From Phallusia mammillata (lineage: Eukaryota), in the NCBI GenBank assembly GCA_965637545.1, contig OZ281500.1:7998001-8062000 (forward strand): 64,000 nucleotides of DNA, read 5' to 3'. Shown piece by piece: positions 17,227 to 49,000 of the stretch (the first letter of the stretch is position 1; every line of letters begins with the position of its first letter). The position numbers and the translations under genes were made by a program. Below the pieces are notes generated by a model that saw only the letters and a program-made list of their open reading frames with translations, was not told where the DNA came from and ran no database searches.

Positions 17227-20101
17227 ATGGATCAATTTTCACCAAAAAAACAGAAAATTGGTGTGGAAGGTGATGCAATTGTACAAAACTTTATGGAGTG
17301 GATGAACCAAAGGCATTTTATAATTTCACCAAAAGTTCAAATCAAAAAAGCCTCCACTTCTGAAAGATACGGCCTTGTCGCCCTTGAAAACATCACAGAG
17401 GGGGAACAATTATTCCAGGTACCAAGGTAAGAAAGCTACATTGTACATATCACTTAAAAAAAATAAAAAATCATGACTTCGCATTTAATTGTCCTACCTT
17501 GACTTAACATCGCTTGCTTTTCGCCTACCTTTTTAGCAGGGGTCCATTGACTCTTGCAAATTCTGCTTATGTTTCCTTAAAATAGAAAATTGAGTCTAAG
17601 GGTTGTTTAGGAAGGGTGTGTTATTGCACATAATATGAATGATGACATGTGATTTCCACTCAGACCTATTAAGTTGAACTCCAGTCAAAATTTGCTCAAA
17701 GTGATTCTTGACCTTTTTTAAAGTTTCATCAATTGTTATGTTTTTCATTTCAGATCTTCATTACTTTGGGAGCAGACAAGCAGTATATCTGGTGCTTTGA
17801 CATCAAGCAAGGCCCTTGGCAGCACAAGTGGGTGGGTCAAGCTTGTGCTTTGCCTGATGTACGAGTACACTAACAAATCATCATTATTTCGACCTTACCT
17901 TGACTTTGCTCCTTCTGTTGAATGTATGGACCAGCCTATGTTTTGGAATGAAACTTCAAAACAATGGTTGAAAGGTATATATATTTTATAAAATGATAAA
18001 ACTGTTACTAAGAAAACGTTGTCCAATAAAAACCATAACAGAGAGAAAAGATGTGGAATACAGCATAAAACAAACTTTGCAGTTTGGGCTTTTTAACCTA
18101 GGTACAGAAAAATTCAGTTACAGACTGCCTATCAGTTGGAAATTAAAATAAAAAAGAGATGCATTTTGGAAACCATATGTTTAAATATCAAAGAAAACTT
18201 AATATCAAAGAAAACAAAGAAAAAAAAAACTCTGTAAAAATCTCCTGAACACAATTTTGTTGGGTAGTCTGCAAGGCATAAAAAACACTTTTTGGATCAT
18301 ATGCTAAATCAGAACTTTTCTATTAGTGTTTGAACAATTTTGACACAACTAAAGCTATCGATAAAAGTTAGGTTTTTAATTAACATGTTCTTTTTTACCA
18401 GGAACTGGTGTGCTTGATGCTGTTTCAAATGATCTGTCAATGATTGAAAGGGAATATAATGAAATTGCACTTCCGTTTATCAAAAGCAACCTTAAACTGG
18501 GGTTTAATGAATCTCTCCATGACATTAACCTTTACAAACACATGGTAAAAAGTAAAAACTACTTTAAAAGCAGTTTCATTGATTGAAAGGGAATTTAATG
18601 AAATTGCCCCTCCTTTTATCAAAAGCAACCTTAAACTGGGGTTTAATGAAAAACCACTTTTACCAAAATTTAAAAGCAGTTTACATTTTTAGAACTTTGT
18701 TTAATTCAGTTATGTAGTGGTATAAACAAACAGTATGCATTATATACAAACACCATTTATTTCACACTCTTATGTTCAAAGCGTTATGGTTTTGGTAACA
18801 CTGTCAAAAAATAACTTTTTGTTTATTAAATTAAGACAAACTAAACACGAATCACAAATTTACCAAAGTAATTCTTGTTTTTAGTGTGTGATACACTTAT
18901 CATATCTATTTTTCTGTGTGTGTTATTTTTTACAGCATTTTTCTTTTAACAACTGTGAAATTGAGTTTTAAGACTTGAGTTACTGGTTGCGCTAAAATGT
19001 GTTTTTTAGGTTGCATTTGTGATGGCATACAGTTTTACAGAAACAAGTGATGGAAATGAAGTAAACACTCCTTTTATGGTAAATTTGTTGAAACTGATTT
19101 CAAAATATGATCATAAAGGAGTATATTTACAATAGAATGCATTACATTTTTCATCTGACAATGTGTTTTAGGTGCCATTGGCAGATGTACTCAATCATGT
19201 AGCAAAAAATAATGCGTGTCTTGAATATGAAACAACCCACCTTAAGATGATTGCCACAAGGGACATTGCCGGTGATGAACAAATATACAACACATATGGA
19301 TGTGTTGCCAACTGGCAACTATTGCAGGTTATTAAATTAACACTGTGTGTGATAATTATTTGCACAAAGTTGAATCATTTTTTGGCTCGTGTTAAAGGAT
19401 TTACTTGTCTTGCACTAACTGTGGTTCATGAATTGAAGTCAATAATGCCAGCATCATATGTGCACATTTGCTGATTATAATTAGAAATATATATTTAGAT
19501 GTATGGTTTTGTGTTGAAGCACCCTTGCAATATTTACGACACTGTTGACTTAATGATGGAAACATTTTATGGTGTTTTAAAGACAAAATGCTCTTTAAAA
19601 TCCAACCAGGAAAAGTTTAAGTGGTTAACTACAACAGGTAGGCAAATGTTTATGTGTTTAGGAGAGTTAAATTATAACCCAAGTGGGACAAACTGTGATT
19701 TAGGTGGATTACTGCAAAACTCACCCATAACAGTGGGAATAGATGGAATTCTAAGTCATGAAGAATTTCAACTCTTTTTTAAAGTAATTCAAATGACACC
19801 AGAAGAATTCAAGTCATTTTGCATTGACTTTGAAACAGACAATTGGGAAACTGAATCTTCGGAATCATCTGAAGAAGACTCAGAATTTGAAATGCTCCCA
19901 TTTCGCAAGCTAGCAAAAATGTCCCAAGAAAACAAAATTATTTTAAAAGAAGTTGTCTCGCTAACATTAAGCCAGTTTTACAGCGAAACAAAAACACAAT
20001 CATTATCAGCTGTTGACCAATGGAGATATAATAGAGCATGCACTTTAATTCAAGGTCAAACCACAATTTTAAACACACTGCTCAATGCAATAAATGATTG
20101 A
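17227..20101 (+). CDS. SETD6: SETD6-like N-lysine methyltransferase, ~463 aa, 6 exons
   Basis: Exons 17227-17426, 17754-17974, 18402-18544, 19010-19078, 19172-19327, 19499-20101 are in frame (1392 nt). Motifs include SGWVKLVLCLMYE, MVPLADVLNHVAKNNACLEY, IYNTYG and QMYGF, typical of Rubisco-LSMT-type SET proteins of the SETD6 subfamily. Confidence 0.88.
18580..18650 (+). repeat. Intronic 71-bp copy of part of SETD6 exon 3
   Basis: 18580-18650 matches 18441-18511 (TGATTGAAAGGGAAT...GGGGTTTAATGAA) with about 4 mismatches. Confidence 0.85.
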
Positions 20102-26765: not shown

Positions 26766-28554
26766 TTTGTTGTTTATCTTGACAGCACAACTCAATCTAT
26801 GTCATAACAACATAATTATACATCAAAAATTATCACAATTACAAATTGACCATATTTTAACATTTTATTGTTTAACCAACAAACAAAGTGAACAATGCAT
26901 GGGTGACACTGAGACTAGGTCAGGGGTGTGCATACTGCTATTGACATGGTCCGCTCTTATTAAATAGTTCATTGTTTTATACTTTTCACTGGTAAATCGT
27001 AGGAAGTTGTATTTGCACTGCATTGCTGGCAGTTTTGACATTGCGTTACAAAATATGGTTTAAAGCTCTTTGTGGAACTTTGTTTAAAATTTTCCCTTTA
27101 TGGCCGCCTTTTGTGGGGGGTGCAAACTGCAGGTCGGGAACCACTGCAATAAATGATTTTTTCATTACAATGCATGTGTGGTTTTATTGCCTGGCCCTCA
27201 GGATCATTATAGTAAATTTTGGCCCATTGCAAAAATCAGTTGCATGCATCTGCACTAGGTTAAGGACTTTTTACATAGTAAACTAGTATTAAACTTGGTC
27301 AAGAATGTAGAACTCTGGTACATGCAGTTCTTGAATATTCCTGTAAAGCAGTTTCAAATTTCTTATGTAGTGTGAGCAAGCAATTATAATTTTTTGTTTG
27401 GGCTTAATACATTGTATAACTGACGTAAGTCTAACTTTTTGCTGCGTGCGGATAGAGTTGTACAGAAACAATCCTTTGTGTATTTTAACTGTTTCTATTT
27501 AAAAAAAAAAAAAACATTTTGCAGCAAGTCTACATGATAAAAAACAAAACTTTGTGTACAAACTTTGTAAGACAAAGGTGCGGCAGGTATCGTTTTAGTT
27601 TTATCTGGCCTTTCTACAGTCATCAAAATTGCACACCCACGGGACTACTGTGAAAGTTTTGCAAACCATGTGTTCCCAGCAAAAACTTACTTCTTCCAGT
27701 TTTCATGGTCCAGTAATTTTGTTTTGTTGACATGACGTAATATATTTTTGGTTACAAGACTTTTTCAAAAATGCATTATCAGGGGTCAATTGAAAATGCT
27801 TGAGGTTAATCGTAAGGAAACATATAGTTTGACGTTACTTGTAGAACAAAATAATTTTCCAGATTTGATCAGGCACGCACGCATGCTGGCAGCATAGGCT
27901 ATGCTGCATAGCCTACCCAAATGGATATGACCATGACGACCCTCGTCACGTGGGTCACGAGAGAGCGGTCAGAGGTTAAGTGCCCCGTCAAATCGACACC
28001 AAACAATATAAACAATCGAGTCTGTTCCGAAATCTGAGTCCCTTTTACTTAAATTAATAAACTCAACAACTCAACAATTTGTGAATCCACACTAGATCCA
28101 CACAGTGAAATGTGACGCAGCCTCGACCCCATGAACGGTCCAACCCTTTGTGAGGGAATATATGCAAAATTATGAAATCACCTGTTTAATTAGGCTGTTT
28201 TAACGACATGTGATGTGTAAAGCAAAACTGCAAAAGATTACGTTTTGTCAAACGTAAGATATGCCCACTGCTTTGTGGATTGTGCAGTTGCGAAACAGAA
28301 ACAATAGTCATGTGCGGAGAGTGAGGTAGTCTTGTATGACGCAACATCATTTAACCGACTAAATGGAGCTGTTGCAGAAAGAGCAGTACACCAGGAAGTA
28401 GGCTAGCTAGGCCCGTTTGTTGCACCTATTATTTGCAGCATTCCCGTAACAGATTTAGGTATTGTTAGATTTATCAATAAAGTTTAAGAGAAAGGGCATG
28501 AATAACTTTTTTCCGCACTCGCCACCTGCAGGACCAGCAAAGTTCAAAGAAGTT

Positions 28555-29267
28555 ATGGAGGAAAATGCAAGCTTTTACGAAGAGATACCCCCTTTGCCAA
28601 ACAGTTACGTTGACCCAGCAACAACAGCTAAAATCAATGGCATTCTTACAGCTGTTCGCAACATCGAACAACACGTGAGCATTGCGTATCAACCACCCAG
28701 ACCACCGAAACCATCTCCAACATCAAAAACGCCACCTCCAGTGAAATTAGGTGTGTAAGTAGGCTGTAGCGCTACATTGAAAACATTGTAGTAGCCTAAA
28801 ACTTGTATTTAAGCCAGTCAGCTTTTCGCTAAGCTTTATTCATGCAAACGTTTGTACAGTTGTGGCAAAATGTCATACACTGTAAGGTTTATAGTTTATA
28901 CAACATAGCCTACCTATCAAAATCTGGGAAACTTTTTTAATTTGTTTTGACTCGTATAGACGCAGTACGTTTGCTTGGTAATTATATGTAAATTCTGCAA
29001 GTACAGTTAAACCTAATTTTGTAACATGTTTTTGTAGATGTGGATTTTCATGAACTTCCCCCACCGAGGCCACCTAAAACCAATTCGGCCCATATCGAAA
29101 CTCCAACAAAAACTTTTAACCCATCACAATGCAGTTACTTCCTTAAAAACCTAAAAGACGTTAGAAGCTTTATTGATGAAAATTTCGAGGACGAATACGT
29201 GGACAAGGAGCCTGCAATGATTGCCATGAATACGTTGGTTCGGGCATTTGGCGAACAGAAAATGTAA
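28555..29267 (+). CDS. Unknown small protein, family member A (141 aa, 2 exons)
   Basis: Exons 28555-28750 and 29038-29267 (phase 1, 426 nt): MEENASFYEEIPPLPNSYVDPATTAKINGILTAVRNIEQHVSIAYQPPRPPKPSPTSKTPPPVKL/DVDFHELPPPRPPKTNSAHIETPTKTFNPSQCSYFLKNLKDVRSFIDENFEDEYVDKEPAMIAMNTLVRAFGEQKM. An acceptor at ~28531 keeps the frame open, so an N-terminal extension is possible. Confidence 0.75.
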
Positions 29268-29721
29268 ATATGTACACAAAGTGCACTTGTTGATGTGCAC
29301 ATCAACATTTTAATGTAGTAGACCGTGGGTATTGACACGCTTCGAACCGAAGACATCTCCGCAATGAACGAGGGTGTGTCATGTGCATTGTTATTTTCCC
29401 GCTATCTTTGCAATGTTCAAATGCTTATTTGCATTGTGCATTTTGAAATATCAAACGCAATCCTATAACTTTGTGACAAGTTTTCACATTACTAAGCTTC
29501 TACTGCTGTACAGTTTTTCGCTTTCAGTTTTAAATAAAATATTCTTACGTCAAGACTTTGTTAAATGAACAATAAATGCTTTTGCTTGCCTACTTGGTGG
29601 CCATCTTGAACAGAATTAAGGACTTACACGTACCGAACACAAGGCATTTACAAATTTTATTGATCTAAAAGAGTATGTACCAAGTAATACTGGTCGCAAC
29701 GTTGCGTTTAATAAACTAGTG

Positions 29722-30175
29722 CAGTGTTTCTCAACCTGGGGGTCGCGACCCCCCAAGGGGTCGCCAAGCACTTTTGAGGGGGTCGCGGAGACGCAACCCA
29801 ACACGGAATTATTTTATCTGTATCAAAAAAACTTTCCCTGTGACTTTTGTTTAGCATATAGTAACTCACACGACCGTTTGATTTAGAACGGGCGCAACAA
29901 TATTTGCGATTGTATACTTCTATAATTGCGGGTTTTGGTTTTTCTTAACATAAAAAAAACACGAAATAGTGAAATAGTTAGTGAAAAATAGGCGTTTTCC
30001 GGAATACAGCAAAACGCCGAACTATTGCAGCCACGTTAGATTGCAAATGTGTGATGAACACAATCAACACATGCTGGTAGTTAAACTTCCTGTGTGTGTG
30101 CGTGTGTAAAGGGGTCGCGTGGTGTTAGAAAATCTCTAAAGGGGGTAGCATAGTAAAAAAGGTTGAGAACCACTG
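29722..30175. mobile_element. hAT/Charlie-type MITE (copy in duplication unit 1)
   Basis: TIR CAGTGTTTCTCAACC / GGTTGAGAACCACTG (1 mismatch). Perfect 8-bp TSD AACTAGTG with a CTAG core. Subterminal GGGGTCGC repeats. Confidence 0.92.
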
Positions 30176-30831
30176 AACTAGTGGTTTTCCTGTGTGAGAG
30201 CAGCCAAGTTTCCACAACCAGTTCTACCGTTAACATTTCAGTGGGTTGTTGTTTTGTAGGTTTCCTTTTGGCATCTGTTTAATGCTGAAAGAGGCGTCAC
30301 GGAAATTGATGACTCAGAGGACATGTAGGTATAAAGCCTTATACAATCATACGTGAATAGTCACTACAGTTGCGGTTAATAAAAACGTTAAGTTTTTTTA
30401 ATCAGGTTTGCACGTGCACTGTATTTTTTTATGAGATAATTGTGGTTAGGTTCATAGTTCAATTTTTTAGGTGATAGTTCATATTAGCAGAGTACAAAGG
30501 TGTTTGGGTAAGTGGCTCACATTTCACTGATGAAACATAATAGATACAATCTCTCATCGGTTTCTCAAGGAAGTTAGATCGAAAGTAGTAATGACAAACA
30601 GCAAGGCAAGTCATACTAGGCAGAGAGGATGAGAAATTTTAAATTAAGTTTTAGCTATTCATGCTAGGATTTTTTTGTACTACACAGTACGATGACAATA
30701 ACTAAAGACAAGAACGAAATCTATTGAAACCTAGACAATGTGCTTGCTGTGGTGGACATCATTTTTTGCAACAAGTAGGCCTAATCGCTTAACGTGTGTT
30801 TCTTTTTCAGCATTCTATACGTAAATTAGAA

Positions 30832-31290
30832 ATGTCTTATGACACATCTTACATAACGATGACGCCAAACCGCAACAGCGCGAAGGGAAGGATCGACCAA
30901 ATATGGGACGAAGTTACCAAACTCCAACAGTTGACAAGGCAGAAATTTCCAGCAATAAAACCTCCACCAATGTCGGAAAGCGATCTTGGCAGACCACAGC
31001 AAGGTATGTTTCAATTTTTTTGAAAACAATAATCAATCAAAAACCGTGATTTTTATGAGAGTTGTTTTGCAGCCACCTATGCAGATAGATCGCTGCCAAC
31101 CCCTGATATTATGAACTGTCCCCCCAGCCGGCTTCCCAAAACCTACGAAGAGGAGCAAATCAAATTTTTGTTAAAGTTGTTACTTGATGTCAAGGATTTT
31201 CTGAATCACCAATTCGATGAAAAGAGCAAACAGAAACAACTTCATGTGGACATGATCGACAAAGTGATCCAACAAATAAAAACACCATAA
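30832..31290 (+). CDS. Unknown small protein, family member B (129 aa, 2 exons)
   Basis: Exons 30832-31003 and 31073-31290 (phase 1, 390 nt): MSYDTSYITMTPNRNSAKGRIDQIWDEVTKLQQLTRQKFPAIKPPPMSESDLGRPQQ/ATYADRSLPTPDIMNCPPSRLPKTYEEEQIKFLLKLLLDVKDFLNHQFDEKSKQKQLHVDMIDKVIQQIKTP. Strong acceptor TTTTTCAG at 30810. Confidence 0.75.
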
Positions 31291-31648
31291 AAGCCATTGA
31301 CACACAAAAAAGGAAACCTTTTTGTATAGCTGTTTGCACTACTATTCCTGGTCAAATGTTTGTTTGTTCGGTTTTAACTGCATCATTGTTATTGTCCGCT
31401 TTAGTTGTCCCGGCTTTCGTGCACAACAGTATCACTCTGATGGATTGCATTAAATAATGATCAACTTGTCTTGTATTTAGCGAGAGTAACTGTGCTATAC
31501 AGGATTGGACATGCACTCAGTTTAAAACAAGTTGCTATGTTAAAACGCTCAGGTACGACAATACATGCAAATGCAGAACAGGACTAAGGTTTGAAAAAAC
31601 AATGCGATAGAATTCATATCATCTTGTTTTAATTTACAGCACATTTAG

Positions 31649-32443
31649 CTATTTAATTTTGGATTGAACATTTGGAACTGCAAAACCCTTCAGGGCCAGT
31701 TTAACATCGCTAAGAAGCTTTTCGTTGTCAAGACGTCCTTTATACCCGTTTTCAAAGTTTTCAGCAATAAATATTTCAACCTGGGTTATCTGATTAATTA
31801 GGAAGGTACATTGGTCGGATGTAAAATTGCAAGGTTTAGAGGATCTTTTTGATTTTTTCAAGGAAAGAACTTCTTTGCCTTCTTTGGGATTGCTTTTTGA
31901 TGATTTTGCTTTGTTTTTTTCCTTGTTTTGTTTTCGACCTGTGTATATTGAAACACTTTTCAGATAGAACAAAACATGTAAATTACGAACAAGGTTGCAA
32001 AATGCGCAGGCCTAGGGCGCAAACATGAAAGTATATAAGCCCGAACCTGGTTAAAACCCGAACTCGTTTTTTTAAACCCGAATTAGGTTTCAAAGTAGAT
32101 GGCATTGCCGAATCTATAGCCCGATTTTATTTAAACTTAGCCCGAACCCAGCTCAAATCTGATCCTATAAAAATCCATCCCGACTTACAACGCTGAAACT
32201 ATATGATTAGTTTGTTTAAACCACAGCAAAATTCTGACAAATTACAACAGGAAATTTCGTCATACCCGATTTACTGCTTTCAAGATATGCTGCTGGTTTC
32301 GGTGGACGGTCAGGCGTTGGCAGAGGCTGCGTTTCCAAACGTTTGTTTAAAGCAGATAGTTTATGATATATTTCATCGAGAGTTTGGGTCGTTCCCTGTG
32401 CATCTAAATCCGGGTACCGCATTGCTGGAAGTTCGTAAGACAT
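31649..32443 (-). CDS. Unknown small protein, family member C (155 aa, 2 exons)
   Basis: Exons 32443-32266 and 31938-31649 (phase 1, 468 nt): MSYELPAMRYPDLDAQGTTQTLDEIYHKLSALNKRLETQPLPTPDRPPKPAAYLESSKS/GRKQNKEKNKAKSSKSNPKEGKEVLSLKKSKRSSKPCNFTSDQCTFLINQITQVEIFIAENFENGYKGRLDNEKLLSDVKLALKGFAVPNVQSKIK. Candidate 5'UTR intron 32597-32470. Confidence 0.75.
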
Positions 32444-32744
32444 TTTTTCAGCCTTCACCAAGTGTCGATCTATAAATTTCAGCAACTTTTATTGCCACTT
32501 CTTACAGTTCCAATAAGAGCGTTGGTGGTTATGAACTATATAAAACAAACAAAGATACAACCCACTGAGATTTTAAATTTTTTACTTTGCAGCTTACCCT
32601 CAAAATGTAATTAAGGGTGCATTAATATCTGACTTTTTACACAATGCCAATTTCACTTCTACCTCTACTTTCTTGCTAGTAAATTACTGACTTGCCTGAC
32701 GGGCTGCTGGGAATGCCAAACTATATACGCATTCAAGTATTACG

Positions 32745-33393
32745 ACAGCTAAAATCAATGGCATTCTTACAGCTGTTCGCAACATCGAACAACACGTGAG
32801 CATTGCGTATCAACCACCCAGACCACCGAAACCATCTCCAACATCAAAAACGCCACCTCCAGTGAAATTAGGTGTGTAAGTAGGCTGTAGCGCTACATTG
32901 AAAACATTGTAGTAGCCTAAAACTTGTAGGCTATTTAAGCCAGTCAGCTTTTCGCTAAGCTTTATTCATGCAAACATTTGTACAGTTGTGGCAAAATGTC
33001 ATACACTGTAAGGTTTATAGTTTATACAACATAGCCTACCTATCAAAATCTGGGAAACTTTTTTAATTTGTTTTGACTCGTATAGACGCAGTACGTTTGC
33101 TTGGTAATTATATGTAAATTCTGCAAGTACAGTTAAACCTAATTTTGTAACATGTTTTTGTAGATGTGGATTTTCATGAACTTCCCCCACCGAGGCCACC
33201 TAAAACCAATTCGGTCCATATCGAAACTCCAACAAAAACTTTTAGCCCATCACAATGCAGTTACTTCCTTAAAAACCTAAAAGACGTTAGAAGCTTTATT
33301 GATGAAAATTTCGAGGACGAATACGTGGACAAGGAGCCTGCAATGATTGCCATGAATACGTTGGTTCGGGCATTTGGCGAACAGAAAATGTAA
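32745..33393 (+). pseudogene. A': 5'-truncated duplicate of family member A
   Basis: The duplication breakpoint removes the first 23 codons, including the ATG. The upstream in-frame sequence reaches TGA (32697-32699) without an ATG. Exon remnant 32745-32871 and exon 33164-33393 remain, with two amino-acid changes (NSVH, FSP). Confidence 0.7.
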
Positions 33394-33847
33394 ATATGTA
33401 CACAAAGTGCACTTGTTGATGTGCACATCAACATTTTAATGTAGTAGACTGTGGGTATTGACACGCTTCGAACCGAAGACATCTCCGCAATGAACGAGGG
33501 TGTGTCATGTGCATTGTTATTTTCCCGCTATCTTTGCAATATTCAAATGCTTATTTGCATTGTGCATTTTGAAATATCAAACGCAATCCTATAACTTTGT
33601 GACAAGTTTTCACATTACTAAGCTTCTACTGCTGTACAGTTTTTCGCTTTCAGTTTTAAATAAAATATTCTTACGTCAAGACTTTGTTAAATGAACAATA
33701 AATGCTTTTGCTTGCCTACTTGGTGGCCATCTTGAACAGAATTAAGGACTTACACGTACCGAACACAAGGCATTTACAAATTTTATTGATCTAAAAGAGT
33801 ATGTACCAAGTAATACTGGTCGCAACGTTGCGTTTAATAAACTAGTG

Positions 33848-34302
33848 CAGTGTTTCTCAACCTGGGGGTCGCGACCCCCCAAGGGGTCGCCAAGCACTTT
33901 TGAGGGGGTCGCGGAGACGCAACCGAACACGGAATTATTTTATCTGTATCAAAAAAACTTTCCCTGTGACTTTTGTTTAGCATATAGTAACTCACACGAC
34001 CGTTTGATTTAGAACGGGCGCAACAATATTTGCGATTGTATACTTCTATAATTGCGGGTTTTGGTTTTTCTTAACATAAAAAAAAACACGAAATAGTGAA
34101 ATAGTTAGTGAAAAATAGGCGTTTTCCGGAATACAGCAAAACGCCGAACTATTGCAGCCACGTTAGATTGCAAATGTGTGATGAACACAATCAACACATG
34201 CTGGTAGTTAAACTTCCTGTGTGTGTGCGTGTGTAAAGGGGTCGCGTGGTGTTAGAAAATCTCTAAAGGGGGTCGCATAGTAAAAAAGGTTGAGAACCAC
34301 TG
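33848..34302. mobile_element. hAT/Charlie-type MITE (copy in duplication unit 2)
   Basis: Same TIRs and AACTAGTG TSD as 29722-30175. Copied with the segment rather than inserted independently. Confidence 0.92.
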
Positions 34303-34958
34303 AACTAGTGGTTTTCCTGTGTGAGAGCAGCCAAGTTTCCACAACCAGTTCTACCGTTAACATTTCAGTGGGTTGTTGTTTTGTAGGTTTCCTTTTGGCA
34401 TCTGTTTAATGCTGAAAGAGGCGTCACGGAAATTGATGACTCAGAGGACATGTAGGTATAAAGCCTTATACAATCATACGTGAATAGTCACTACAGTTGC
34501 GGTTAATAAAAACGTTAAGTTTTTTTAATCAGGTTTGCACGTGCACTGTATTTTTTTATGAGATAATTGTGGTTAGGTTCATAGTTCAATTTTTTAGGTG
34601 ATAGTTCATATTAGCAGAGTACAAAGGTGTTTGGGTAAGTGGCTCACATTTCACTGATGAAACATAATAGATACAATCTCTCATCGGTTTCTCAAGGAAG
34701 TTAGATCGAAAGTAGTAATGACAAACAGCAAGGCAAGTCATACTAGGCAGAGAGGATGAGAAATTTTAAATTAAGTTTTAGCTATTCATGCTAGGATTTT
34801 TTTGTACTACACAGTACGATGACAATAACTAAAGACAAGAACGAAATCTATTGAAACCTAGACAATGTGCTTGCTGTGGTAGACATCATTTTTTGCAACA
34901 AGTAGGCCTAATCGCTTAACGTGTGTTTCTTTTTCAGCATTCTATACGTAAATTAGAA

Positions 34959-35417
34959 ATGTCTTATGACACATCTTACATAACGATGACGCCAAACCGC
35001 AACAGCGCGAAGGGAAGGATCGACCAAATATGGGACGAAGTTACCAAACTCCAACAGTTGACAAGGCAGAAATTTCCAGCAATAAAACCTCCACCAATGT
35101 CGGAAAGCGATCTTGGCAGACCACAACAAGGTATGTTTCAATTTTTTTGAAAACAATAATCAATCAAAAACCGTGATTTTTATGAGAGTTGTTTTGCAGC
35201 CACCTATGCAGATAGATCGCTGCCAACCCCTGATATTATGAACTGTCCCCCCAGCCGGCTTCCCAAAACCTACGAAGAGGAGCAAATCAAATTTTTGTTA
35301 AAGTTGTTACTTGATGTCAAGGATTTTCTGAATCACCAATTCGATGAAAAGAGCAAACAGAAACAACTTCATGTGGACATGATCGACAAAGTGATCCAAC
35401 AAATAAAAACACCATAA
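34959..35417 (+). CDS. B': intact duplicate of family member B (129 aa)
   Basis: Exons 34959-35130 and 35200-35417. Only a synonymous CAG/CAA difference from B was seen. Confidence 0.72.
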
Positions 35418-35775
35418 AAGCCATTGACACACAAAAAAGGAAACCTTTTTGTATAGCTGTTTGCACTACTATTCCTGGTCAAATGTTTGTTTGTTCGGTT
35501 TTAACTGCATCATTGTTATTGTCCGCTTTAGTTGTCCCGGCTTTCGTGCACAACAGTATCACTCTGATGGATTGCATTAAATAATGATCAACTTGTCTTG
35601 TATTTAGCGAGAGTAACTGTGCTATACAGGATTGGACATGCACTCAGTTTAAAACAGGTTGCTATGTTAAAACGCTCAGGTACGACAATACATGCAAATG
35701 CAGAACAGGACTAAGGTTTGAAAAAACAATGCGATAGAATTCATATCATCTTGTTTTAATTTACAGCACATTTAG

Positions 35776-36570
35776 CTATTTAATTTTGGATTGAACATTT
35801 GGAACTGCAAAACCCTTCAGGGCCAGTTTAACATCGCTAAGAAGCTTTTCGTTGTCAAGACGTCCTTTATACCCGTTTTCAAAGTTTTCAGCAATAAATA
35901 TTTCAACCTGGGTTATCTGATTAATTAGGAAGGTACATTGGTCGGATGTAAAATTGCAAGGTTTAGAGGATCTTTTTGATTTTTTCAAGGAAAGAACTTC
36001 TTTGCCTTCTTTGGGATTGCTTTTTGATGATTTTGCTTTGTTTTTTTCCTTGTTTTGTTTTCGACCTGTGTATATTGAAACACTTTTCAGATAGAACAAA
36101 ACATGTAAATTACGAACAAGGCTGCAAAATGCGCAGGCCTAGGGCGCAAACATGAAAGTATATAAGCCCGAACCTGGTTAAAACCCGAACTCGTTTTTTT
36201 AAACCCGAATTAGGTTTCAAAGTAGATGGCATTGCCGAATCTATAGCCCGATTTTATTTAAACTTAGCCCGAACCCAGCTCAAATCTGATCCTATAAAAA
36301 TCCATCCCGACTTACAACGCTGAAACTATATGATTAGTTTGTTTAAACCACAGCAAAATTCTGACAAATTACAACAGGAAATTTCGTCATACCCGATTTA
36401 CTGCTTTCAAGATATGCTGCTGGTTTCGGTGGACGGTCAGGCGTTGGCAGAGGCTGCGTTTCCAAACGTTTGTTTAAAGCAGATAGTTTATGATATATTT
36501 CATCGAGAGTTTGGGTCGTTCCCTGTGCATCTAAATCCGGGTACCGCATTGCTGGAAGTTCGTAAGACAT
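35776..36570 (-). CDS. C': intact duplicate of family member C (155 aa)
   Basis: Exons 36570-36393 and 36065-35776. The translation is identical to C in the ORF track. This copy keeps the original upstream flank. Confidence 0.72.
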
Positions 36571-37430
36571 TTTTTCAGCCTTCACCAAGTGTCGATCTAT
36601 AAATTTCAGCAACTTTTATTGCCACTTCTTACAGTTCCAATAAGAGCGTTGGTGGTTATGAACTATATAAAACAAACAAAGATACAACCCACTGAGATTT
36701 TAAATTTTTTACTTTGCAGCTTACCCTCAAAATGTAATTAAGGGTGCATTAATATCTGGCTTTTTACACAATGCCAATTTCACTTCTACCTCTACTTTCT
36801 TGCTAGTAAATTACTGACTTGCCTGACGGGCTGCTGGGAATGCCAAACTATATACGCATTCAAGTATTACGCATGTGCGGATATGCACAGCAACGCGTCA
36901 CAGGTTTTGTTACCAAGGTCTCCACAGTCAAAGCAAACATACATTTCCACTTTTTGCGACACTGGTCACACTGGATTCCAAAATATTTAACATGACATAT
37001 GTTTAACAAAACATGTCCTTCGATTATATTTGTAAAAAATAGTCTTTATAATGTTTTCGTATTAGCTTTGTTGTAAAACATGTTTTTTTGAACAACCAGT
37101 CCTCTGTCACCGCGATCATTCAATTCCATGTTCCAATTTGCTCTATACATGGCAGCAATGCGTAAATAATATAAAGAAGAGAACACATTTTGACTTGGGA
37201 TGGTGTCGACAAGTTCTATTTCAGTCTGGGTCAACACATTGTGAACGTTAAACATTAATGCGAAGGACGGTTTTTCCCGAATGGTTTCAACAAGTTAAAT
37301 ACACGACTTTCCTAACGTTGGTGCTGTGATTGTTCGTATGCTTCAACATACAGAGAAATTTTCTTCAAGCGTTTAAACGTGTAAGTAAGTCTGCGACTGT
37401 TGTTTCACTGCATTTAAATCAAAATCAGTC

Positions 37431-37811
37431 ATGTGCAGTCAACCCACGCAAGCTGAAAGCGACGCCAAGTTTGATAAGATTTTAATGCTTTTGGAAAACA
37501 CAAACGAACGATTGTCACAGTTGGAAAGACAGCAAAAGCCACAAAAAACTGAAAGTGGCAACGAATACACCGTACTGGAGGTGGCTTCTGTAGCAAAAGG
37601 AACAACAGGTTGTGGAAATACCAACCTTGCAAGTCAGCACAAGTCTGGAAAGTTCTTTGATGATCAGCAACGAATATTTTTATCTTTGCAATTGGAGGAG
37701 GTACTGCAATTTTTGCGACCACTGCCATGTGAAGATGTTCAGACCAAAAAACTGCAAATCCAAAATCTTAAGTCTGTTATAGCAGCCATTAAGGTCGACA
37801 AACGACATTAA
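37431..37811 (+). CDS. Unknown small protein, family member D (126 aa, uninterrupted CDS)
   Basis: MCSQPTQAESDAKFDKILMLLENTNERLSQLERQQKPQKTESGNEYTVLEVASV...FFDDQQRIFLSLQLEEVLQFLRPLPCEDVQTKKLQIQNLKSVIAAIKVDKRH. Same N-helix and C-terminal pattern as A/B/C/E. Candidate short 5'UTR intron 37381-37428. Confidence 0.72.
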   Translation: MCSQPTQAESDAKFDKILMLLENTNERLSQLERQQKPQKTESGNEYTVLEVASVAKGTTGCGNTNLASQHKSGKFFDDQQRIFLSLQLEEVLQFLRPLPCEDVQTKKLQIQNLKSVIAAIKVDKRH

Positions 37812-38021
37812 AACTGTAATAAGTGGCTTTTATTTATGTAAACGACTTAGGCATAAAAATGTAAGAGAGTATCAAACTCCTTGAAACGATTAGCTGTTAA
37901 ATATGTTTTCAAAGCATTTATTGATACGTGGTGGTGTGCATATCCTCTTGGACAAGTTTGTAAGATCCACTAACACTTTGACACTTACGCGTTTTTTTTT
38001 CGATTTTGTTTGTCTATATAC

Positions 38022-38473
38022 CAGAGCTCTTCAACCGGGGTTCCGCGGAACCCTAGGGTTCCGTACAACCCTTTCAGGGGTTCCGTGAACTTTAAGGGTT
38101 GCACGGGAAATAGCAATTCGAACACGAATGATTCATAGTATCATTGTTTCGAACAGCAATGCTCGCCTGTGCAATATTGGAAACCTTTGTTATACCATTG
38201 ATCAATTGTGACGTAATATACACAACCTTGTTACACTCTAGCTAAGTTGCGAGATTAATGTAGAAACGACCGATCCAAATAACACGGCAATGCGTTTCAG
38301 TTAACCGTTTAATTCAAGTCAACCTTTGTGATGTGCTTTGGATGTGTATGCATCTTTTTTCTTTGATGTAGCCTACTTGTATTACATTCATTAAAATTAT
38401 TTTATGGGGGTTCCGCAAAGTTTGACAAAATACCGTAAGGGTTCCGCGTCACTAAAAAGGTTGAAGAGCACTG
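38022..38473. mobile_element. hAT/Charlie-type MITE, second family
   Basis: TIR CAGAGCTCTTCAACC / GGTTGAAGAGCACTG (1 mismatch). Right flank GTCTATAC, left flank GTCTATATAC (TSD with an extra TA). Subterminal GGGTTCCG repeats. Confidence 0.85.
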
Positions 38474-38875
38474 GTCTATACTTACGTATATTCGGTACTC
38501 TTGCAGTCCGGTTTTTGCTACAAAAAGTCCTAAACATATGTCCATGATGCTATAAAATGCTTTTTAGAATTAAAAAAAAAATCTTTTCACAACAGCTTTT
38601 TGCGTTTGCAGAGTTATTTACGTTTGATATTTCAAAATAGATTTGTATGTGCTTTTTGTGATGCCATTTAGTCCATACATCCTACGTACATTGCGTTTTC
38701 AGAACAAATAGTAGTAAATGGATTAAGGCTCTGTGTACAAATGTGACGCTCGTTTTGGCACAGCGCCTCACCAGACCGTAGCGACTGCTGTAACATTCTT
38801 TCCTTGTACTGATAAGGTGCGTTAGGTCTGAGACAAGCAAACACCGTGACGGTCTACGTGAGGAAAGTTAGAGAC

Positions 38876-39644
38876 ATGGAGAATCTAGGTGCTACCAACC
38901 ATTACGCCGAGATCACGGACGGTAACTACTGTATACCTCAACCAATGACAGGAAAGCAAGGTACATTGGACAGCAAGCTCGATGAAATGTTGATAAGAAT
39001 TCGACGCATTGATAAGTCACTGCACGATGGCAATAGCGGACAACCAAACAAACCAATAGTTCCACCAAAACCACCATCAAAAAGCAGCAAGTTCGTCCCT
39101 GTGTTTAACAGGCTACAGTCAGGTATTTAACAGTTTTTACTTTTTGTCTTTAACACATACGGAAGTATTTTTGTGTTGTTTAGTGCAGGTGTACTTCTTT
39201 TGCTCAGTTTTTGCCGATTTACGCTAAAGTACAAACACATAATTGTAAAACATATAAAGTACAATTGTTTGATTTGTCAAAACCTTTATAGTTTTAGAGT
39301 GATAATATCGTACTTCGACATTGCTGTACTGTAGTATTTACACAACAATCAAACGTTTGGATAAGAAAACTGGAATAGTTGTCTTTGTGGCATTTGTTTA
39401 TTTGGATAGACTGCATGTTTTGTTTTTAGAACCTCCACCTCCTCCACGCCCAGCGAAGTCTAATAAAGGAGCACCGATTCCGGATTCCGGAAAGACATTA
39501 CCCAGACCCGAATGCGACTTTCTTGTGGCGCAACTGCAAAACGTCAGGTCGTATCTTGATGACATGATTGACGACGATTTTGACGGCAAACTTGAAAATT
39601 TGTCAACTTTGGACAACGTTATTGGCGCTCTTTTGTGCCGCTAA
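38876..39644 (+). CDS. Unknown small protein, family member E (153 aa, 2 exons)
   Basis: Exons 38876-39122 and 39430-39644 (phase 1, 462 nt): MENLGATNHYAEITDGNYCIPQPMTGKQGTLDSKLDEMLIRIRRIDKSLHDGNSGQPNKPIVPPKPPSKSSKFVPVFNRLQS/EPPPPPRPAKSNKGAPIPDSGKTLPRPECDFLVAQLQNVRSYLDDMIDDDFDGKLENLSTLDNVIGALLCR. Confidence 0.78.
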
Positions 39645-43386: not shown

Positions 43387-43410
43387 CGGTTTCATTTCGG
43401 TTTCACTTTC
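43387..43410 (-). promoter_or_regulatory. ISRE/IRF-E-like array of four GAAA cores
   Basis: The minus strand reads GAAAGTGAAACCGAAATGAAACCG, about 2.6 kb upstream of the IRF ATG. Confidence 0.5.
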
Positions 43411-46051: not shown

Positions 46052-49000
46052 ATGACAATTCAACGACAACGACGTGGCATGGAAGGAACTGGCCTAGACC
46101 AGAAACGTTTAAGGTATTGTAGGTTTGCATTTGTCATACAATTACTAGAGGTTGATCACCATATATTTTTGCGTGACATTGCAAGATATAAAATGTGTAC
46201 ACACGTAACTTGTAACAACTTGTGTATAGTTTGTTTCCCTGCATTTCAATCATTTAAACTACAGAGCTTTTGCAGTTTTATAACTTTTTATTGAAATATC
46301 TGTTACAAGTTGTTAATGTCGGAAATTTTATGATAAGTTACCATAACGGTATAGATTTAGTGAAACCAGTTAACGTGTTGCTTCAAAAATCGAAATCTTA
46401 CAAAGATTTCACAAAAACTAAAACCCGCAAGTGGTATAACTGTCTGCAATTAAAAACTAAAAGCGAACCCATGTCAAGTTACTCACTGGAATGTGTATGC
46501 AAAGGTATGTGGACTCTTTACAAAGCTAGTCCACACAAAAGCAACTAAAACCCAGCTGCAACCGGACGGGCTGTACCATTGCGCCACTATCCTCACAATA
46601 AACAAAACCAGCGTACCAAGAGTTTACTCCGAGGTAGTAAAATTGTTTTAACTCTTATTTCAGGCTTCGCGATTGGCTGGAAATGCGAATCGGCGACCGC
46701 AAATATCCAGGGTTACGTTGGGAAAATCAACGAGAAGGAATTTTTCGGATCCCGTGGAAACACGGTGCGAGACATGGATGGAAGGAAGAAGAAGACGCGA
46801 GATTGTTCCGCGAGTGGTCGGAGCACACAGGTACAACATAAATTTTTTTGGCCTCATATATTTAGTCCCGCAAGAAGAGAATAGATTACTATTAACGATT
46901 ATCAACAACTAATGTTTAACAAATGGTTTTCTGGTATTCAGTTAAAGCGGTGCATTTTCGTTGAAGTTAAGTTTCTAAAAAAATCAATGGGCAAATATGT
47001 CAACTCACACTAAACATGTCTAAGGCGTAATAAAGTTGGCATGGTACGTTGTGCCTTGAATAGTATAATTACATATTTATGCAAAACTGCTAAATTGGGG
47101 ACGTTTGAACATTTTAATTATGCCCTATAAACATGTCATGCAAAAAGAGGACGCATTGTCTATGACATTCGAAGGAAAGAAATTTTGTCATGGGACTGTT
47201 TAAGTACTTTATACAAAATTTTTAGGTAATTTTCACAATTATTAGCCTGGAAAAGTGGAGCAAATTATAAATTTTCTGCCTTCTTGCAATTAATGCCCAA
47301 AGCAAGGCACTAAGGGCAAATAGTAATTAAGTGTGTCGTTATTTCCATATAACAGGGTTTGGCTTGTACAAAAAAAAAACGCATAGCGAAATACACCCAC
47401 CAACCTAATGATACAACCTATAAAAGGTATTTCAAATGCAGTTTATTGCCCGTTTTTATGACCAAAAGTCAATGTACAATGTCACGTCTTGGCGTGCCTT
47501 GCAATTTAGTTGTTTTTTTTGCATTTAGGTGCTTCACCGAAGGATGTAAAACAACACAAGGCAAATTTCCGCTGCGCCTTGAACTCGCTGCGAGATATCG
47601 AAAAGCTGCAAGTTTCCAACAAATGCAAGGGTGACGATGCCTACCGACTCTACAAACTTTTGCCGAAACGATCGACCAAGAGCGGTAATAGTAAGAACCA
47701 TACGCATTTTCACCGTTGCTTCCGTTCTTTATCCTTTATAGGCTATAACGAGGCTTTATTTGTTTAAGAGTGGATAAGAAAGCGAACGCCCTCAACAAAA
47801 GCCCCGCCTCTGCGACCGCGGCGCTCACAATTTGCAACGTCGCAGATCACTTCGTTTGCTCACGAGCGAAAAACTCCCCTCTCTGCTCCGCCTGGATCAA
47901 CACCAGGGACTTTTGGAAGTGCGGTTTACGCTGGGTCGAATTCGTACGACAGACTCAACTTTTCGCAGTACTTGGCCCCTCGTGAAACAAGTGACTTTGT
48001 TTACAATGAGATTCCCACGCCGCCCATAGCTTTCCCAACCTCGCAGATGGAAGTAGCGACGTTGCACCCAGCTATGCCGATCTCACCTTACAATGGGTGC
48101 TTTCCCAACCCTTCGTCGGCTGCTTTAGAGCATTTCGGCGAATACCGTAATGACTCACCGCAACAAGGGCAAAGTTTTATTTACCCATCGCCGTCAGGCA
48201 CGATTGCCGACGCGTTAGGCGAGGCCACCGCTGCGGTGCAAAATTATCCCAACTACGGTCGTAACGACCTTGAACGCACCGTGAGCATTTCATCGAACCG
48301 TGGTACTCTCCTGTTTGACGACATGCTTCACCTGCAACCAAGTTTGATCGATACTCCTCCCCGGGAAGACGACACATTACCAGCTGGTGGCGGCTTTGAC
48401 CTGACTCAAAAGCAACCTGGAAAAGAATTAATAACATGGCCACAGGACCAAGTGCCATCGCCATCATTTCATTCAATGAAAGACGTTTCAGAATATTTGA
48501 AAGGTTTGTCTAAAATGTTCAAACATTTTAGCGTGTATGGGGTGTATGGGTAAAGCCGACCAAACAAAGAATGTTTTAGCAACTACTACTAATCCCCCTA
48601 AACGTATATCTCTGCAATGTAAAGTAGTAACAGCAAGTTGCAAAAAAAAACTGCTGGGCGGTAAAAACGCTCCCCATTTAGTTTACGTAATAAAAGTTTT
48701 ACAAACACCCATTTCCCTTTATTAAAAGTAAAACTTCAATTGTTTCCAGGTGACACTTTCGAAGACAATTCACAAGTATGGGACCTAACCACAAAGTTCC
48801 ACAAAAATGTAAGTCCCTGAAGTTCACGAGTTCGAACTAGAAGTAGCTTTAAAACGGCGACATTTTGTTTGCACAGACATTTACAACACCGTTACAAGAC
48901 CAGCAAGGCAGGTGCACGGATGCCGATTGGACAATGAAGGAGAGTTTGCAAGCAAATGACACACTTCTAGATTTTTGCGTCGAAGATTTGTCGATCGGAA

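What the first reader, a model, noticed from the sequence alone, without database searches (positions are those of the whole stretch)
28555..39644. Unrecognised tandem family of small, adaptor-like proteins (5 paralogues, 8 loci) between Maelstrom and IRF
Seen: genes A, B, C, D and E (126-155 aa) only become evident after splicing. They share one layout: an N-terminal Tyr-bearing segment, an amphipathic helix (KINGILTAVRNIEQHV / RIDQIWDEVTKLQQL / TLDEIYHKLSALNKRL / KFDKILMLLENTNERL / KLDEMLIRIRRIDKSL), a variable linker (Pro-rich in A, B, C, E) and a conserved C-terminal module. A, B, C and E have a phase-1 intron in the linker. No signal peptide or transmembrane segment is visible. The paralogues are highly diverged, yet part of the array was re-duplicated very recently. 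Inference: a lineage-specific, fast-evolving family of cytoplasmic oligomeric scaffolds or decoys undergoing birth-and-death evolution. I do not recognise it as any named family.
Basis: partly seen in the sequence, partly recalled or inferred. Interest (0 to 1): 0.88.

Follow-up and report, generated by a model that had tools for sequence, protein, structure and literature searches.

The report
Ascidian small adaptor-like gene family beside IRF
This stretch of a sea-squirt genome holds a real tandem cluster of small soluble proteins that has relatives in other sea squirts and sits next to an IRF gene in three genera; no named family or paper matched it, and its adaptor role is inferred from motifs, not shown.

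Summary
Window 28.5-39.6 kb encodes five paralogous small proteins: A 160, B 129, C 155, D 126 and E 153 aa. They occupy eight loci, because a 4.12-kb unit (3' part of A, plus B and C) is tandemly duplicated at 99.5% identity. The second A copy lacks its first 41 codons and has no start codon. RNA contigs confirm the B and C introns exactly. Leave-one-out profiles show that all five share a homologous C-terminal module (19-33 bits; best of 1000 shuffles 11 or less).

The family is not an orphan. An exhaustive HMM search of 1.84 billion proteins found 21 small relatives. Every named one is an "uncharacterized" ascidian protein (Ciona intestinalis, C. savignyi, Clavelina lepadiformis, Styela clava).

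In Ciona, Clavelina and this genome the cluster lies directly upstream of an IRF gene, in the same order. A phase-1 intron just before a conserved PPxPP[K/R] motif is shared.

AlphaFold gives a disordered Tyr-bearing head, a long helix, a disordered linker and a confident helical hairpin. Pfam, PDB sequence and fold searches and the literature gave no named family.

The most likely role is a self-associating SH3/SH2 docking adaptor. That is inference from conserved motifs only. D and E were not shown to be spliced or expressed.

The parts
28498..28750 (+). Gene A exon 1 (CDS): Tyr motifs YEEI and YVDP, amphipathic helix, first PPRPPK
   Evidence: Splice enumeration; N-part HMM 86 bits; motifs. 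Junction not tested with reads.
29038..29267 (+). Gene A exon 2 (CDS): PPPRPPK motif plus C-terminal helical hairpin module
   Evidence: Phase-1 acceptor TTTTTGTAG|AT; C-module HMM 122.8 bits
29715..30182 (.). MITE-like element (23-nt terminal inverted repeats) between A and B; copy at about 33841-34309
   Evidence: Inverted repeat. High multi-copy RNA depth with loose ends at the copy.
30218..30324 (+). Gene B non-coding 5' exon (placed from copy 2, 34345-34451, offset 4127)
   Evidence: Contig joint 34451/34938 GT..AG in run X2; in-frame stops upstream of the ATG
30832..31003 (+). Gene B coding exon 1 (CDS part)
   Evidence: junction confirmed on copy 2
31073..31290 (+). Gene B coding exon 2 (RLPK motif plus hairpin module)
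   Evidence: 69-nt intron seen in contigs of 3 runs on copy 2, 35128/35198 with cut +2
31649..31938 (-). Gene C exon 2 (Lys-rich linker plus hairpin module)
   Evidence: 327-nt intron confirmed on copy 2, 36063/36391 with cut +2
32266..32443 (-). Gene C exon 1 (YELP and YPDL motifs, helix, PDRPPKP)
28621..32741 (.). Tandem duplication, copy 1
   Evidence: blastn 99.54% over 4127 columns, 13 mismatches, 2 indels
32742..36868 (.). Tandem duplication, copy 2. The junction at 32742-32744 shares 2-3 bases with the right flank.
32742..32871 (+). A' exon-1 remnant: starts inside the helix, lacks the first 41 codons, has no in-frame ATG
33164..33393 (+). A' exon 2 (intact module; 2 non-synonymous differences from A)
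34959..35130 (+). B' coding exon 1
   Evidence: RNA contigs with 0 mismatches
35200..35417 (+). B' coding exon 2
   Evidence: RNA contigs; translated transcript gives the 129-aa ORF
35776..36065 (-). C' exon 2
   Evidence: RNA contig in run X1
36393..36570 (-). C' exon 1 (CDS part)
   Evidence: RNA contig in run X1, 5' UTR reaching 36659
37431..37811 (+). Gene D: intronless, D-type subfamily
   Evidence: ORF; AlphaFold helices 7-34, 78-95 and 103-122; D-type clade 98/93. No RNA coverage in 4 runs.
38015..38480 (.). Second MITE-like element between D and E
   Evidence: 22-nt terminal inverted repeats; high RNA depth
38876..39122 (+). Gene E exon 1 (YAEI, NYCIP, helix, PIVPPKP)
   Evidence: exon 1 conserved in contig L005 and in Ciona and Clavelina orthologues
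39430..39644 (+). Gene E exon 2 (PPPPRPAK plus hairpin module)
   Evidence: 45% aa identity to the Ciona LOC100186212 exon in collinear position; one RNA contig in X6 at 39466-39644
46656..47677 (+). Neighbouring IRF gene: two DNA-binding-domain exons (46656-46832, 47519-47677)
   Evidence: tblastx 75-76% identity to the Ciona gene carrying PF00605
24042..25232 (-). Neighbouring Maelstrom gene, large exon
   Evidence: Pfam PF13017, E 1.4e-17

Best explanation
Shown: the region is a tandem cluster of five paralogous genes (seven intact loci and one truncated copy). They belong to an ascidian-wide, so far undescribed family of small soluble proteins.

Each protein has four parts:
1. A disordered head, carrying one or two YxxI/L/P tyrosines in A, B, C and E.
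2. A 25-30 residue amphipathic, heptad-like helix (core LDEIL...V).
3. A disordered linker. In A-, C- and E-type members it carries conserved class-II SH3-ligand-type motifs (P-I/V-V-P-P-K-P and PPPRPPK). In D-type relatives of other species it carries a YEEI/YEAL-type tyrosine; D itself has only YTVL.
4. A C-terminal helical hairpin of about 48 residues.

Inferred: the proteins work as non-enzymatic docking adaptors. The helix and hairpin would bundle with each other, or with those of other family members, to give dimers or higher oligomers. The proline motifs would recruit SH3-domain proteins. The tyrosines, once phosphorylated, would recruit SH2-domain proteins such as Src-family kinases, Crk or Nck. 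The assembly would then present several docking sites at once. The conserved position next to IRF may reflect shared regulation, but that is only a lead.
For: - Family and layout.
- Transcription and splicing of B and C.
- Relatives limited to small ascidian proteins.
- Same gene order (D-type, E-type, IRF) in Clavelina, and E-type then IRF in Ciona.
- Conserved phase-1 intron 0-8 codons before PPxPP[K/R] in Ciona and Clavelina genes.
- Two AlphaFold models (D; Ciona orthologue of E) give the same plan. The helices have pLDDT 90-97 and the head and linker are of low confidence.
- Islands of conservation inside otherwise unalignable linkers. KP-x-VPPKP is found in all five E-type sequences. PPxPP[K/R] is found in 12 non-D-type members. 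[IVL]Y[ED][EA][ILV] is found in 5 of 8 D-type members.
- Constraint: pN/pS about 0.43 with dS saturated.
- No TM segment or signal peptide.
- The helix-1 part of the profile weakly matches GCN4-type coiled coils (E 0.02-0.6).
- The hairpin's nearest shapes are hairpins that pair into four-helix bundles (BRAF BRS, RLIP76 Ral-binding domain, ESCRT-I core), but Z is only about 6.5 and non-specific.
- Language-model neighbours are Tyr-phosphorylated, Pro-rich scaffolds (BANK1, SRCIN1, NYAP, paxillin), with scores in the noise range.
Against: - No binding, phosphorylation or oligomerisation was tested.
- Short Pro and Tyr motifs arise easily in disordered sequence.
- B and D lack a PxxPx[K/R] motif.
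- D and its closest relative lack a good YEEI-type site.
- D showed no RNA in four runs, and E only an exon-2 contig.
- The fold and language-model matches are within noise.
- The Styela member is not next to IRF.
Confidence: 0.45

Rival explanations
1. The proteins are small structural or complex-forming helical subunits. The helix and hairpin would be built into a fixed multi-protein bundle, as in ESCRT-I, Mediator or BLOC-type subunits. They would have no phosphotyrosine or SH3 signalling role, and the Pro and Tyr motifs would be incidental or serve other binders (WW, EVH1, profilin).
For: The only confidently folded parts are helices. The nearest shapes include ESCRT-I core, MED7/MED21 and IcmR-IcmQ hairpins. 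B and D lack PxxPx[K/R].
Against: Strong conservation of PPxPP[K/R], PxVPPKP and YEEI-type islands across genera inside disordered linkers. Subunits of fixed complexes rarely expand and turn over in tandem arrays.
Confidence: 0.25
2. The family is functionally tied to the adjacent IRF gene. It would be co-regulated with IRF, or act as adaptors or inhibitors in the pathway that controls this IRF, so the conserved linkage would be kept by selection.
For: E-type gene directly upstream of IRF on the same strand in Ciona, Clavelina and this genome, with D-E-IRF collinear.
Against: The linkage could be inherited microsynteny among related orders. The Styela member is not near an IRF. ISRE-like GAAANNGAAA sites are not enriched in the window: 10 found, 6.1 expected, and 9 of 100 shuffles reach 10. 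No expression data link the genes.
Confidence: 0.12
3. The family is a highly diverged branch of a known family, such as paxillin-type LD-motif adaptors, SARAH-domain proteins or BANK1/BCAP-type scaffolds.
For: Helix 1 reads like an LD motif (LDEIL, LDEMLIRI; by eye). The hairpin start (FLKNL..V) recalls SARAH domains (recalled from memory). The Atlas feature search's first hit is a BANK1 fragment, score 0.80.
Against: No Pfam hit for any of 30 members even at E up to 1. No PDB sequence hit. No fold match above noise. The exhaustive HMM search returned only small ascidian-type proteins. An Atlas score of 0.80 is reached by a third of shuffled proteins.
Confidence: 0.05
4. Artefact: chance ORFs or dead genes, with the 99.5% duplicate arising from haplotypes mis-assembled in tandem.
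For: D has no RNA support and E very little. The duplicate's 0.3% divergence is within the range of allelic variation. A' is truncated.
Against: B and C are spliced exactly as modelled. Orthologues, synteny and intron phase are conserved across genera. pN/pS is below 1. The duplication has a clean internal junction with 2-3 bp microhomology and no gap.
Confidence: 0.03

Closest known systems
Ciona intestinalis LOC100186212 (F6VP27, 156 aa) and LOC108950073 (F6VP21); Ciona savignyi H2ZD76; Clavelina lepadiformis CAK8686623-626; Styela clava LOC120348100
   Same: True homologues (E 1e-16 to 1e-6 with a profile built only from this window). Same length, same helix-linker-hairpin plan and same intron phase and position. 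Same position upstream of IRF in Ciona and Clavelina.
   Different: All are annotated only as 'uncharacterized' and none is studied. Copy number differs. A, B and C of this genome have no clear one-to-one orthologue. The Styela gene is not IRF-linked.
Paxillin-type N-terminal adaptor regions (LD motifs plus SH3- and SH2-docking sites)
   Same: Works alike on paper: a short amphipathic LD-like helix, a polyproline SH3 site and YxxP-type tyrosines within a disordered chain (established knowledge of paxillin; motifs here).
   Different: No LIM domains, about a quarter of the size, and no Pfam Paxillin hit. The C-terminal hairpin has no counterpart. Not a member.
Small Pro/Tyr-motif adaptors of vertebrate immune signalling (for example SCIMP, LAT and PAG-type transmembrane adaptors)
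   Same: Small non-enzymatic proteins whose function lies in SH2 and SH3 docking motifs; lineage-restricted and fast-evolving (established knowledge).
   Different: Those are membrane-anchored. This family has no TM segment and has a folded helical hairpin instead.
Helical-hairpin pairing domains (BRAF BRS domain 5vr3, RLIP76 Ral-binding domain 6zqt, ESCRT-I core 2caz)
   Same: The same simple antiparallel two-helix shape, which in those proteins pairs with partner helices.
   Different: Z is only 5.9-6.5, below the tool's stated noise level for helical folds, and identity is 7-12%. A shared arrangement only, not evidence of kinship.

Membership tests
Any Pfam-A family | Score at or near a curated Pfam model | tested here: not met
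   The separate exon translations of A, B, C and E, full-length D, and 21 relatives gave no hit above E 0.004, and no family recurred in more than 3 of 30 members.
SARAH domain proteins (MST/RASSF/Salvador) | C-terminal helical dimerisation domain matching the Mst1_SARAH or Nore1-SARAH models | tested here: not met
   No SARAH model among the Pfam hits at E up to 1 for 30 members, and no MST or RASSF chain in the PDB profile search. The resemblance was recalled from memory only.
Paxillin family | LD motifs (LDxLLxxL) plus C-terminal LIM domains | tested here: not met
   Helix 1 of B, C, D and E fits an LD-like pattern by eye. There are no LIM domains and no Pfam Paxillin hit.
ITAM-bearing signalling subunits | YxxL/I, then 6-8 residues, then YxxL/I | tested here: not met
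   A: YEEI-x6-YVDP. E: YAEI-x4-YCIP. C: YELP-x3-YPDL. None fits. The Ciona orthologue's YAAI-x6-YCLV comes closest.
Class II SH3 ligands (a motif class, not a protein family) | PxxPx[K/R] in an accessible, disordered segment | tested here: met
   A has two copies (PPRPPK), C has PDRPPK, E has PIVPPK and PPRPAK; B and D have none. The motif is conserved in Ciona, Clavelina and several unnamed relatives. The linker has low pLDDT. Binding was not tested.
Transmembrane adaptor proteins (LAT, PAG, SCIMP type) | A single TM helix anchoring a motif-rich cytoplasmic tail | tested here: not met
   The maximum Kyte-Doolittle 19-residue mean is 0.45-0.90 in all five proteins.
Ascidian helix-linker-hairpin family (defined here; members include Ciona LOC100186212) | C-terminal module K-[TF]-F-x3-Q-C-x-F-L-x2-Q-L-x2-V-x2-F...K...L-x2-V-I-x-A, predicted as a two-helix hairpin | tested here: met
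   All five paralogues: leave-one-out scores of 19.5-33.3 bits, ungapped alignment and hairpin pLDDT above 90.
Ascidian helix-linker-hairpin family (defined here) | Phase-1 intron just upstream of the PPxPP[K/R] motif (non-D-type); intronless D-type | tested here: met
   A, B, C and E here. Ciona P0002 and P0023 and Clavelina P0001 and P0007. D-type members are single ORFs here, in Clavelina and in two unnamed assemblies.

The most novel reading that the evidence does not exclude
The family is a tunicate-specific set of signalling adaptors wired to the neighbouring IRF. They would be oligomerising, tyrosine-phosphorylated platforms in an innate-immune pathway that activates or restrains IRF. 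This would be an independently evolved counterpart of the vertebrate IRF-activating adaptors, kept beside its transcription factor across at least three ascidian genera.
Probability: 0.08. Interest if true: 0.8.

Novelty: new variant of a known kind. Interest (0 to 1): 0.5.

Why it matters
The work defines a protein family and a roughly 48-residue helical domain. No Pfam model, solved-structure sequence or paper found here matched them.

The family is restricted, as far as could be seen, to ascidians, the closest invertebrate relatives of vertebrates. It is conserved across Ciona, Clavelina, Styela and this genome.

If the conserved Pro and Tyr islands are real docking sites, these genes are lineage-specific additions to the chordate phosphotyrosine/SH3 signalling toolkit. 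They would be a tractable example of adaptors evolving by tandem birth and death. The Ciona orthologues are directly testable in an established model organism.

The conserved neighbourhood with IRF gives a concrete but unproven lead towards tunicate innate immunity.

In practice, the genes here were absent from the protein collections searched, so the models given can improve annotation.

Tried and rejected
- Word-indexed protein searches with the C-module alignment and the 30-row family alignment found nothing, or only two already known members. This is a limit of the word and length filter, not evidence of absence.
- Exact look-up of D and of neighbouring ORFs found nothing in the collection.
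- Pfam gave no family.
- PDB sequence profiles gave only weak GCN4-type coiled-coil matches to helix 1.
- Foldseek against PDB, VIA wide search and Atlas shape search gave only generic helical hairpins within noise.
- Foldseek against AFDB clusters gave one useful hit, the Ciona homologue F6VP27.
- The Atlas feature search returned Pro-rich, Tyr-phosphorylated scaffolds at noise-level scores. Kept as a lead only.
- ISRE-like sites are not enriched.
- Rfam found nothing in the window.
- Literature searches by accession and by topic found nothing.
- Transposon origin rejected: single syntenic locus across genera. The high-depth RNA blocks are two MITE-like elements between the genes, not the genes themselves.
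- A pLxIS-type IRF-recruiting motif was considered. The 'SVIS' in D-type members lies inside the second hairpin helix, so it is structural rather than a disordered phospho-motif. Rejected by inspection.
- P0025 (544 aa), listed in one cluster, is an unrelated bacterial protein.
- Full-length spliced A, B, C and E could not be passed to the structure or database tools by reference. Exon pieces and full-length D were used instead.

Full report
**What is in the sequence**

ORF listing and enumeration of GT..AG introns give five gene models:
- A: 28498-28750 + 29038-29267, 160 aa.
- B: 30832-31003 + 31073-31290, 129 aa.
- C: minus strand, 32443-32266 + 31938-31649, 155 aa.
- D: 37431-37811, intronless, 126 aa.
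- E: 38876-39122 + 39430-39644, 153 aa.

All four introns are phase 1 and lie in the linker. Family HMMs run against the six-frame translation of the whole 64-kb window find exactly eight C-module loci and eight N-part loci, all within 28.4-39.7 kb. Nothing else scores above 11.2 bits.

**Transcription**

It was laid on 33645-39644 (B', C', D, E) with four RNA runs from three studies.
- Contigs join 35128/35198 (69 nt skipped, GT..AG, three runs) and 36063/36391 (327 nt, minus-strand GT..AG, one run). These are exactly the modelled B and C introns shifted by the duplication offset.
- One contig adds a non-coding 5' exon to B (34345-34451 joined to 34938). The assembled transcript translates to the 129-aa protein, with in-frame stops upstream.
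- D had no coverage.
- E had one exon-2 contig (39466-39644, run X6).
- A lay outside the laid stretch.
- Two blocks of very high depth (33845-34444, 38045-38644) are MITE-like repeats with 22-23-nt terminal inverted repeats, not family genes.

**Are the five really related?**

Pairwise BLASTP is weak (A-C 3e-6, C-E 1e-3, A-B 0.014, D-E 0.097 in a five-sequence database). In leave-one-out tests, each C-terminal part scores 19.5-33.3 bits against a profile of the other four. The best of 1000 shuffles reaches at most 11.2 bits. The N-terminal parts score 4.8-15.7 bits; 21 of 1000 shuffles reach B's score. The C-modules align over about 48 columns without gaps. The family claim holds.

**The recent duplicate**

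Copy 1 (28621-32741) and copy 2 (32742-36868) are head-to-tail and 99.54% identical, with 13 mismatches and 2 indels. The junction sits inside A exon 1, so A' lacks its first 41 codons and has no in-frame ATG. The junction shares 2-3 bases (AC/ACG) with the unique right flank, and there is no gap. I read this as a genuine microhomology-mediated tandem duplication rather than stacked haplotypes. That is inference: spanning genomic reads were not examined.

**Relatives elsewhere**

A profile built only from this window (D plus the exon pieces, alignment A2) was scored against 1.84 billion representative proteins. It gave 21 hits at E of 1e-3 or better, and 8 at 1e-10 or better. All are 55-236 aa long.

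All named hits are ascidian and 'uncharacterized':
- Ciona intestinalis LOC100186212 (F6VP27) and LOC108950073 (F6VP21).
- C. savignyi H2ZD76.
- Clavelina lepadiformis CAK8686623 to CAK8686626.
- Styela clava LOC120348100.

The remaining hits come from unnamed ENA, JGI or Logan assemblies. No non-ascidian named protein was hit. None of the accessions appears in the paper library, and topic searches found nothing. Independently, Foldseek against AlphaFold DB clusters put F6VP27 first (E 2e-3). Earlier agents of this scan named the genome Phallusia mammillata. I did not verify that. The 76% IRF-exon identity and 45% E-exon identity to Ciona fit an ascidian.

**Conserved neighbourhood and gene structure**

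- In Ciona the order is RPS24(-), a 200-aa member, the 156-aa member, then IRF(+).
- In Clavelina it is 236-, 125-, 152- and 161-aa members, then IRF(+).
- tblastx shows a collinear D-type, E-type, IRF order between Clavelina and this window, and E-type then IRF with Ciona.
- A 1.2-kb contig from another run (L005) carries a D-type ORF followed 319 nt later by an E-type exon 1.
- The Styela gene lies between a methyltransferase gene and a GH31 gene, with no IRF within 10 kb.
- The phase-1 intron lies 0-8 codons before PPxPP[K/R] in the Ciona and Clavelina genes too.
- D-type genes are intronless in this genome, in Clavelina and in two unnamed assemblies.
- A tree of the module separates a D-type clade (support 98/93, with Styela as sister) from the rest. 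B and C are long branches.

**Shape**

AlphaFold2 of D gives helix 7-34, a low-confidence linker 35-77, and helices 78-95 and 103-122 at pLDDT 92-97. The Ciona E orthologue, predicted with the 30-row alignment, gives the same plan: head 1-28, helix 29-58, linker, and hairpin 112-132/138-154 at pLDDT about 95.

PDB Foldseek, the VIA wide search and the Atlas shape search return only generic helical hairpins. The best Z is 6.6, below the tool's stated noise level for helical folds. The helix-1 part of the profile weakly matches GCN4-type coiled coils (E 0.02-0.6). No TM segment or signal peptide is present.

**Motifs**

Inside linkers that otherwise do not align, a few islands are conserved:
- KP-x-V/I-P/A-PKP directly after helix 1, in all five E-type sequences.
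- PPxPP[K/R] about 20 residues before the hairpin, in A (twice), E, both Ciona species, Clavelina and several unnamed members.
- A head tyrosine in 'NYC', and usually a second YxxI.
- [IVL]-Y-[ED]-[EA]-[ILV] in 5 of 8 D-type members.

PxxPx[K/R] is the class II SH3 ligand pattern. YEEI and YDEV are the textbook optima for Src-family and Nck SH2 domains. Both statements are established knowledge, not tested here. B and D lack PxxPx[K/R]. D has only YTVL, and its nearest relative has no such tyrosine.

Against L005, D and E exon 1 show pN about 0.32-0.33 and pS about 0.75-0.77 (saturated). The ratio is about 0.43, so there is purifying selection overall.

**Interpretation**

- Shown: a real, transcribed (B and C) and conserved gene family with a new helical module, found in several ascidian genera and turning over by tandem duplication.
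- Inferred, at about 45%: self-associating adaptors that dock SH3 and SH2 proteins.
- Rivals: a non-signalling helical complex subunit (25%), a functional tie to the neighbouring IRF (12%), a diverged known family (5%), an artefact (3%).
- ISRE-like sites are not enriched in the window (10 found against 6.1 expected).

**Limits**

- Full-length spliced A, B, C and E could not be handed to the tools by reference, so the structure and database work used D, the exon pieces and database homologues.
- The second, richer profile could be run only through the word-indexed search, which returned two known members.
- The taxonomic range beyond ascidians is therefore not settled.

Noticed in passing
window 29715-30182 (copy at about 33841-34309) and 38015-38480: Two MITE-like elements of about 468 bp, each with 22-23-nt terminal inverted repeats 422 nt apart. 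They attract very high RNA-contig depth with many loose ends, so they belong to an abundant, transcribed repeat family. The first ends 36 bp before B's non-coding 5' exon and might contribute to its promoter.
   Followed up: partly
window 43395-43410 (-): Two overlapping ISRE-like sites (GAAACCGAAAGTGAAA) about 3.2 kb upstream of the first IRF DNA-binding exon. This could be an IRF auto-regulatory element. ISRE-like sites are not enriched in the window overall.
   Followed up: no
window 5597-16000 (+) and 19172-20101 (+): Upstream neighbours: a Sec24-like gene (Pro/Gln-rich N-terminal exons; Sec23/Sec24 zinc finger at 9896-10234, Pfam E 1.5e-15) and a gene with a SET-domain-like exon (by eye, not tested).
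   Followed up: partly
L005 (Logan DRR090687 contig, 1209 nt): A related species' contig carries a D-type ORF and, 319 nt downstream, an E-type exon 1 that runs on into intron sequence. D and E are therefore much closer together there than in this window (1065 nt, where a MITE-like element sits between them).
   Followed up: partly
L002 and L006 (ENA ERZ21736675), L008 (ENA ERZ25067590): Assemblies filed without an organism name contain long contigs (0.65-1.4 Mb) with family members and an RPS24 neighbour, as in Ciona. They look like unlabelled ascidian genomes inside metagenome-type assemblies.
   Followed up: no
window 29089 and 29119 versus 33215 and 33245: Both exon-2 differences between A and the truncated A' are non-synonymous (A to V, N to S). 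B/B' has one synonymous difference and C/C' has none. This fits relaxed constraint on A', but the numbers are too small to test.
   Followed up: partly
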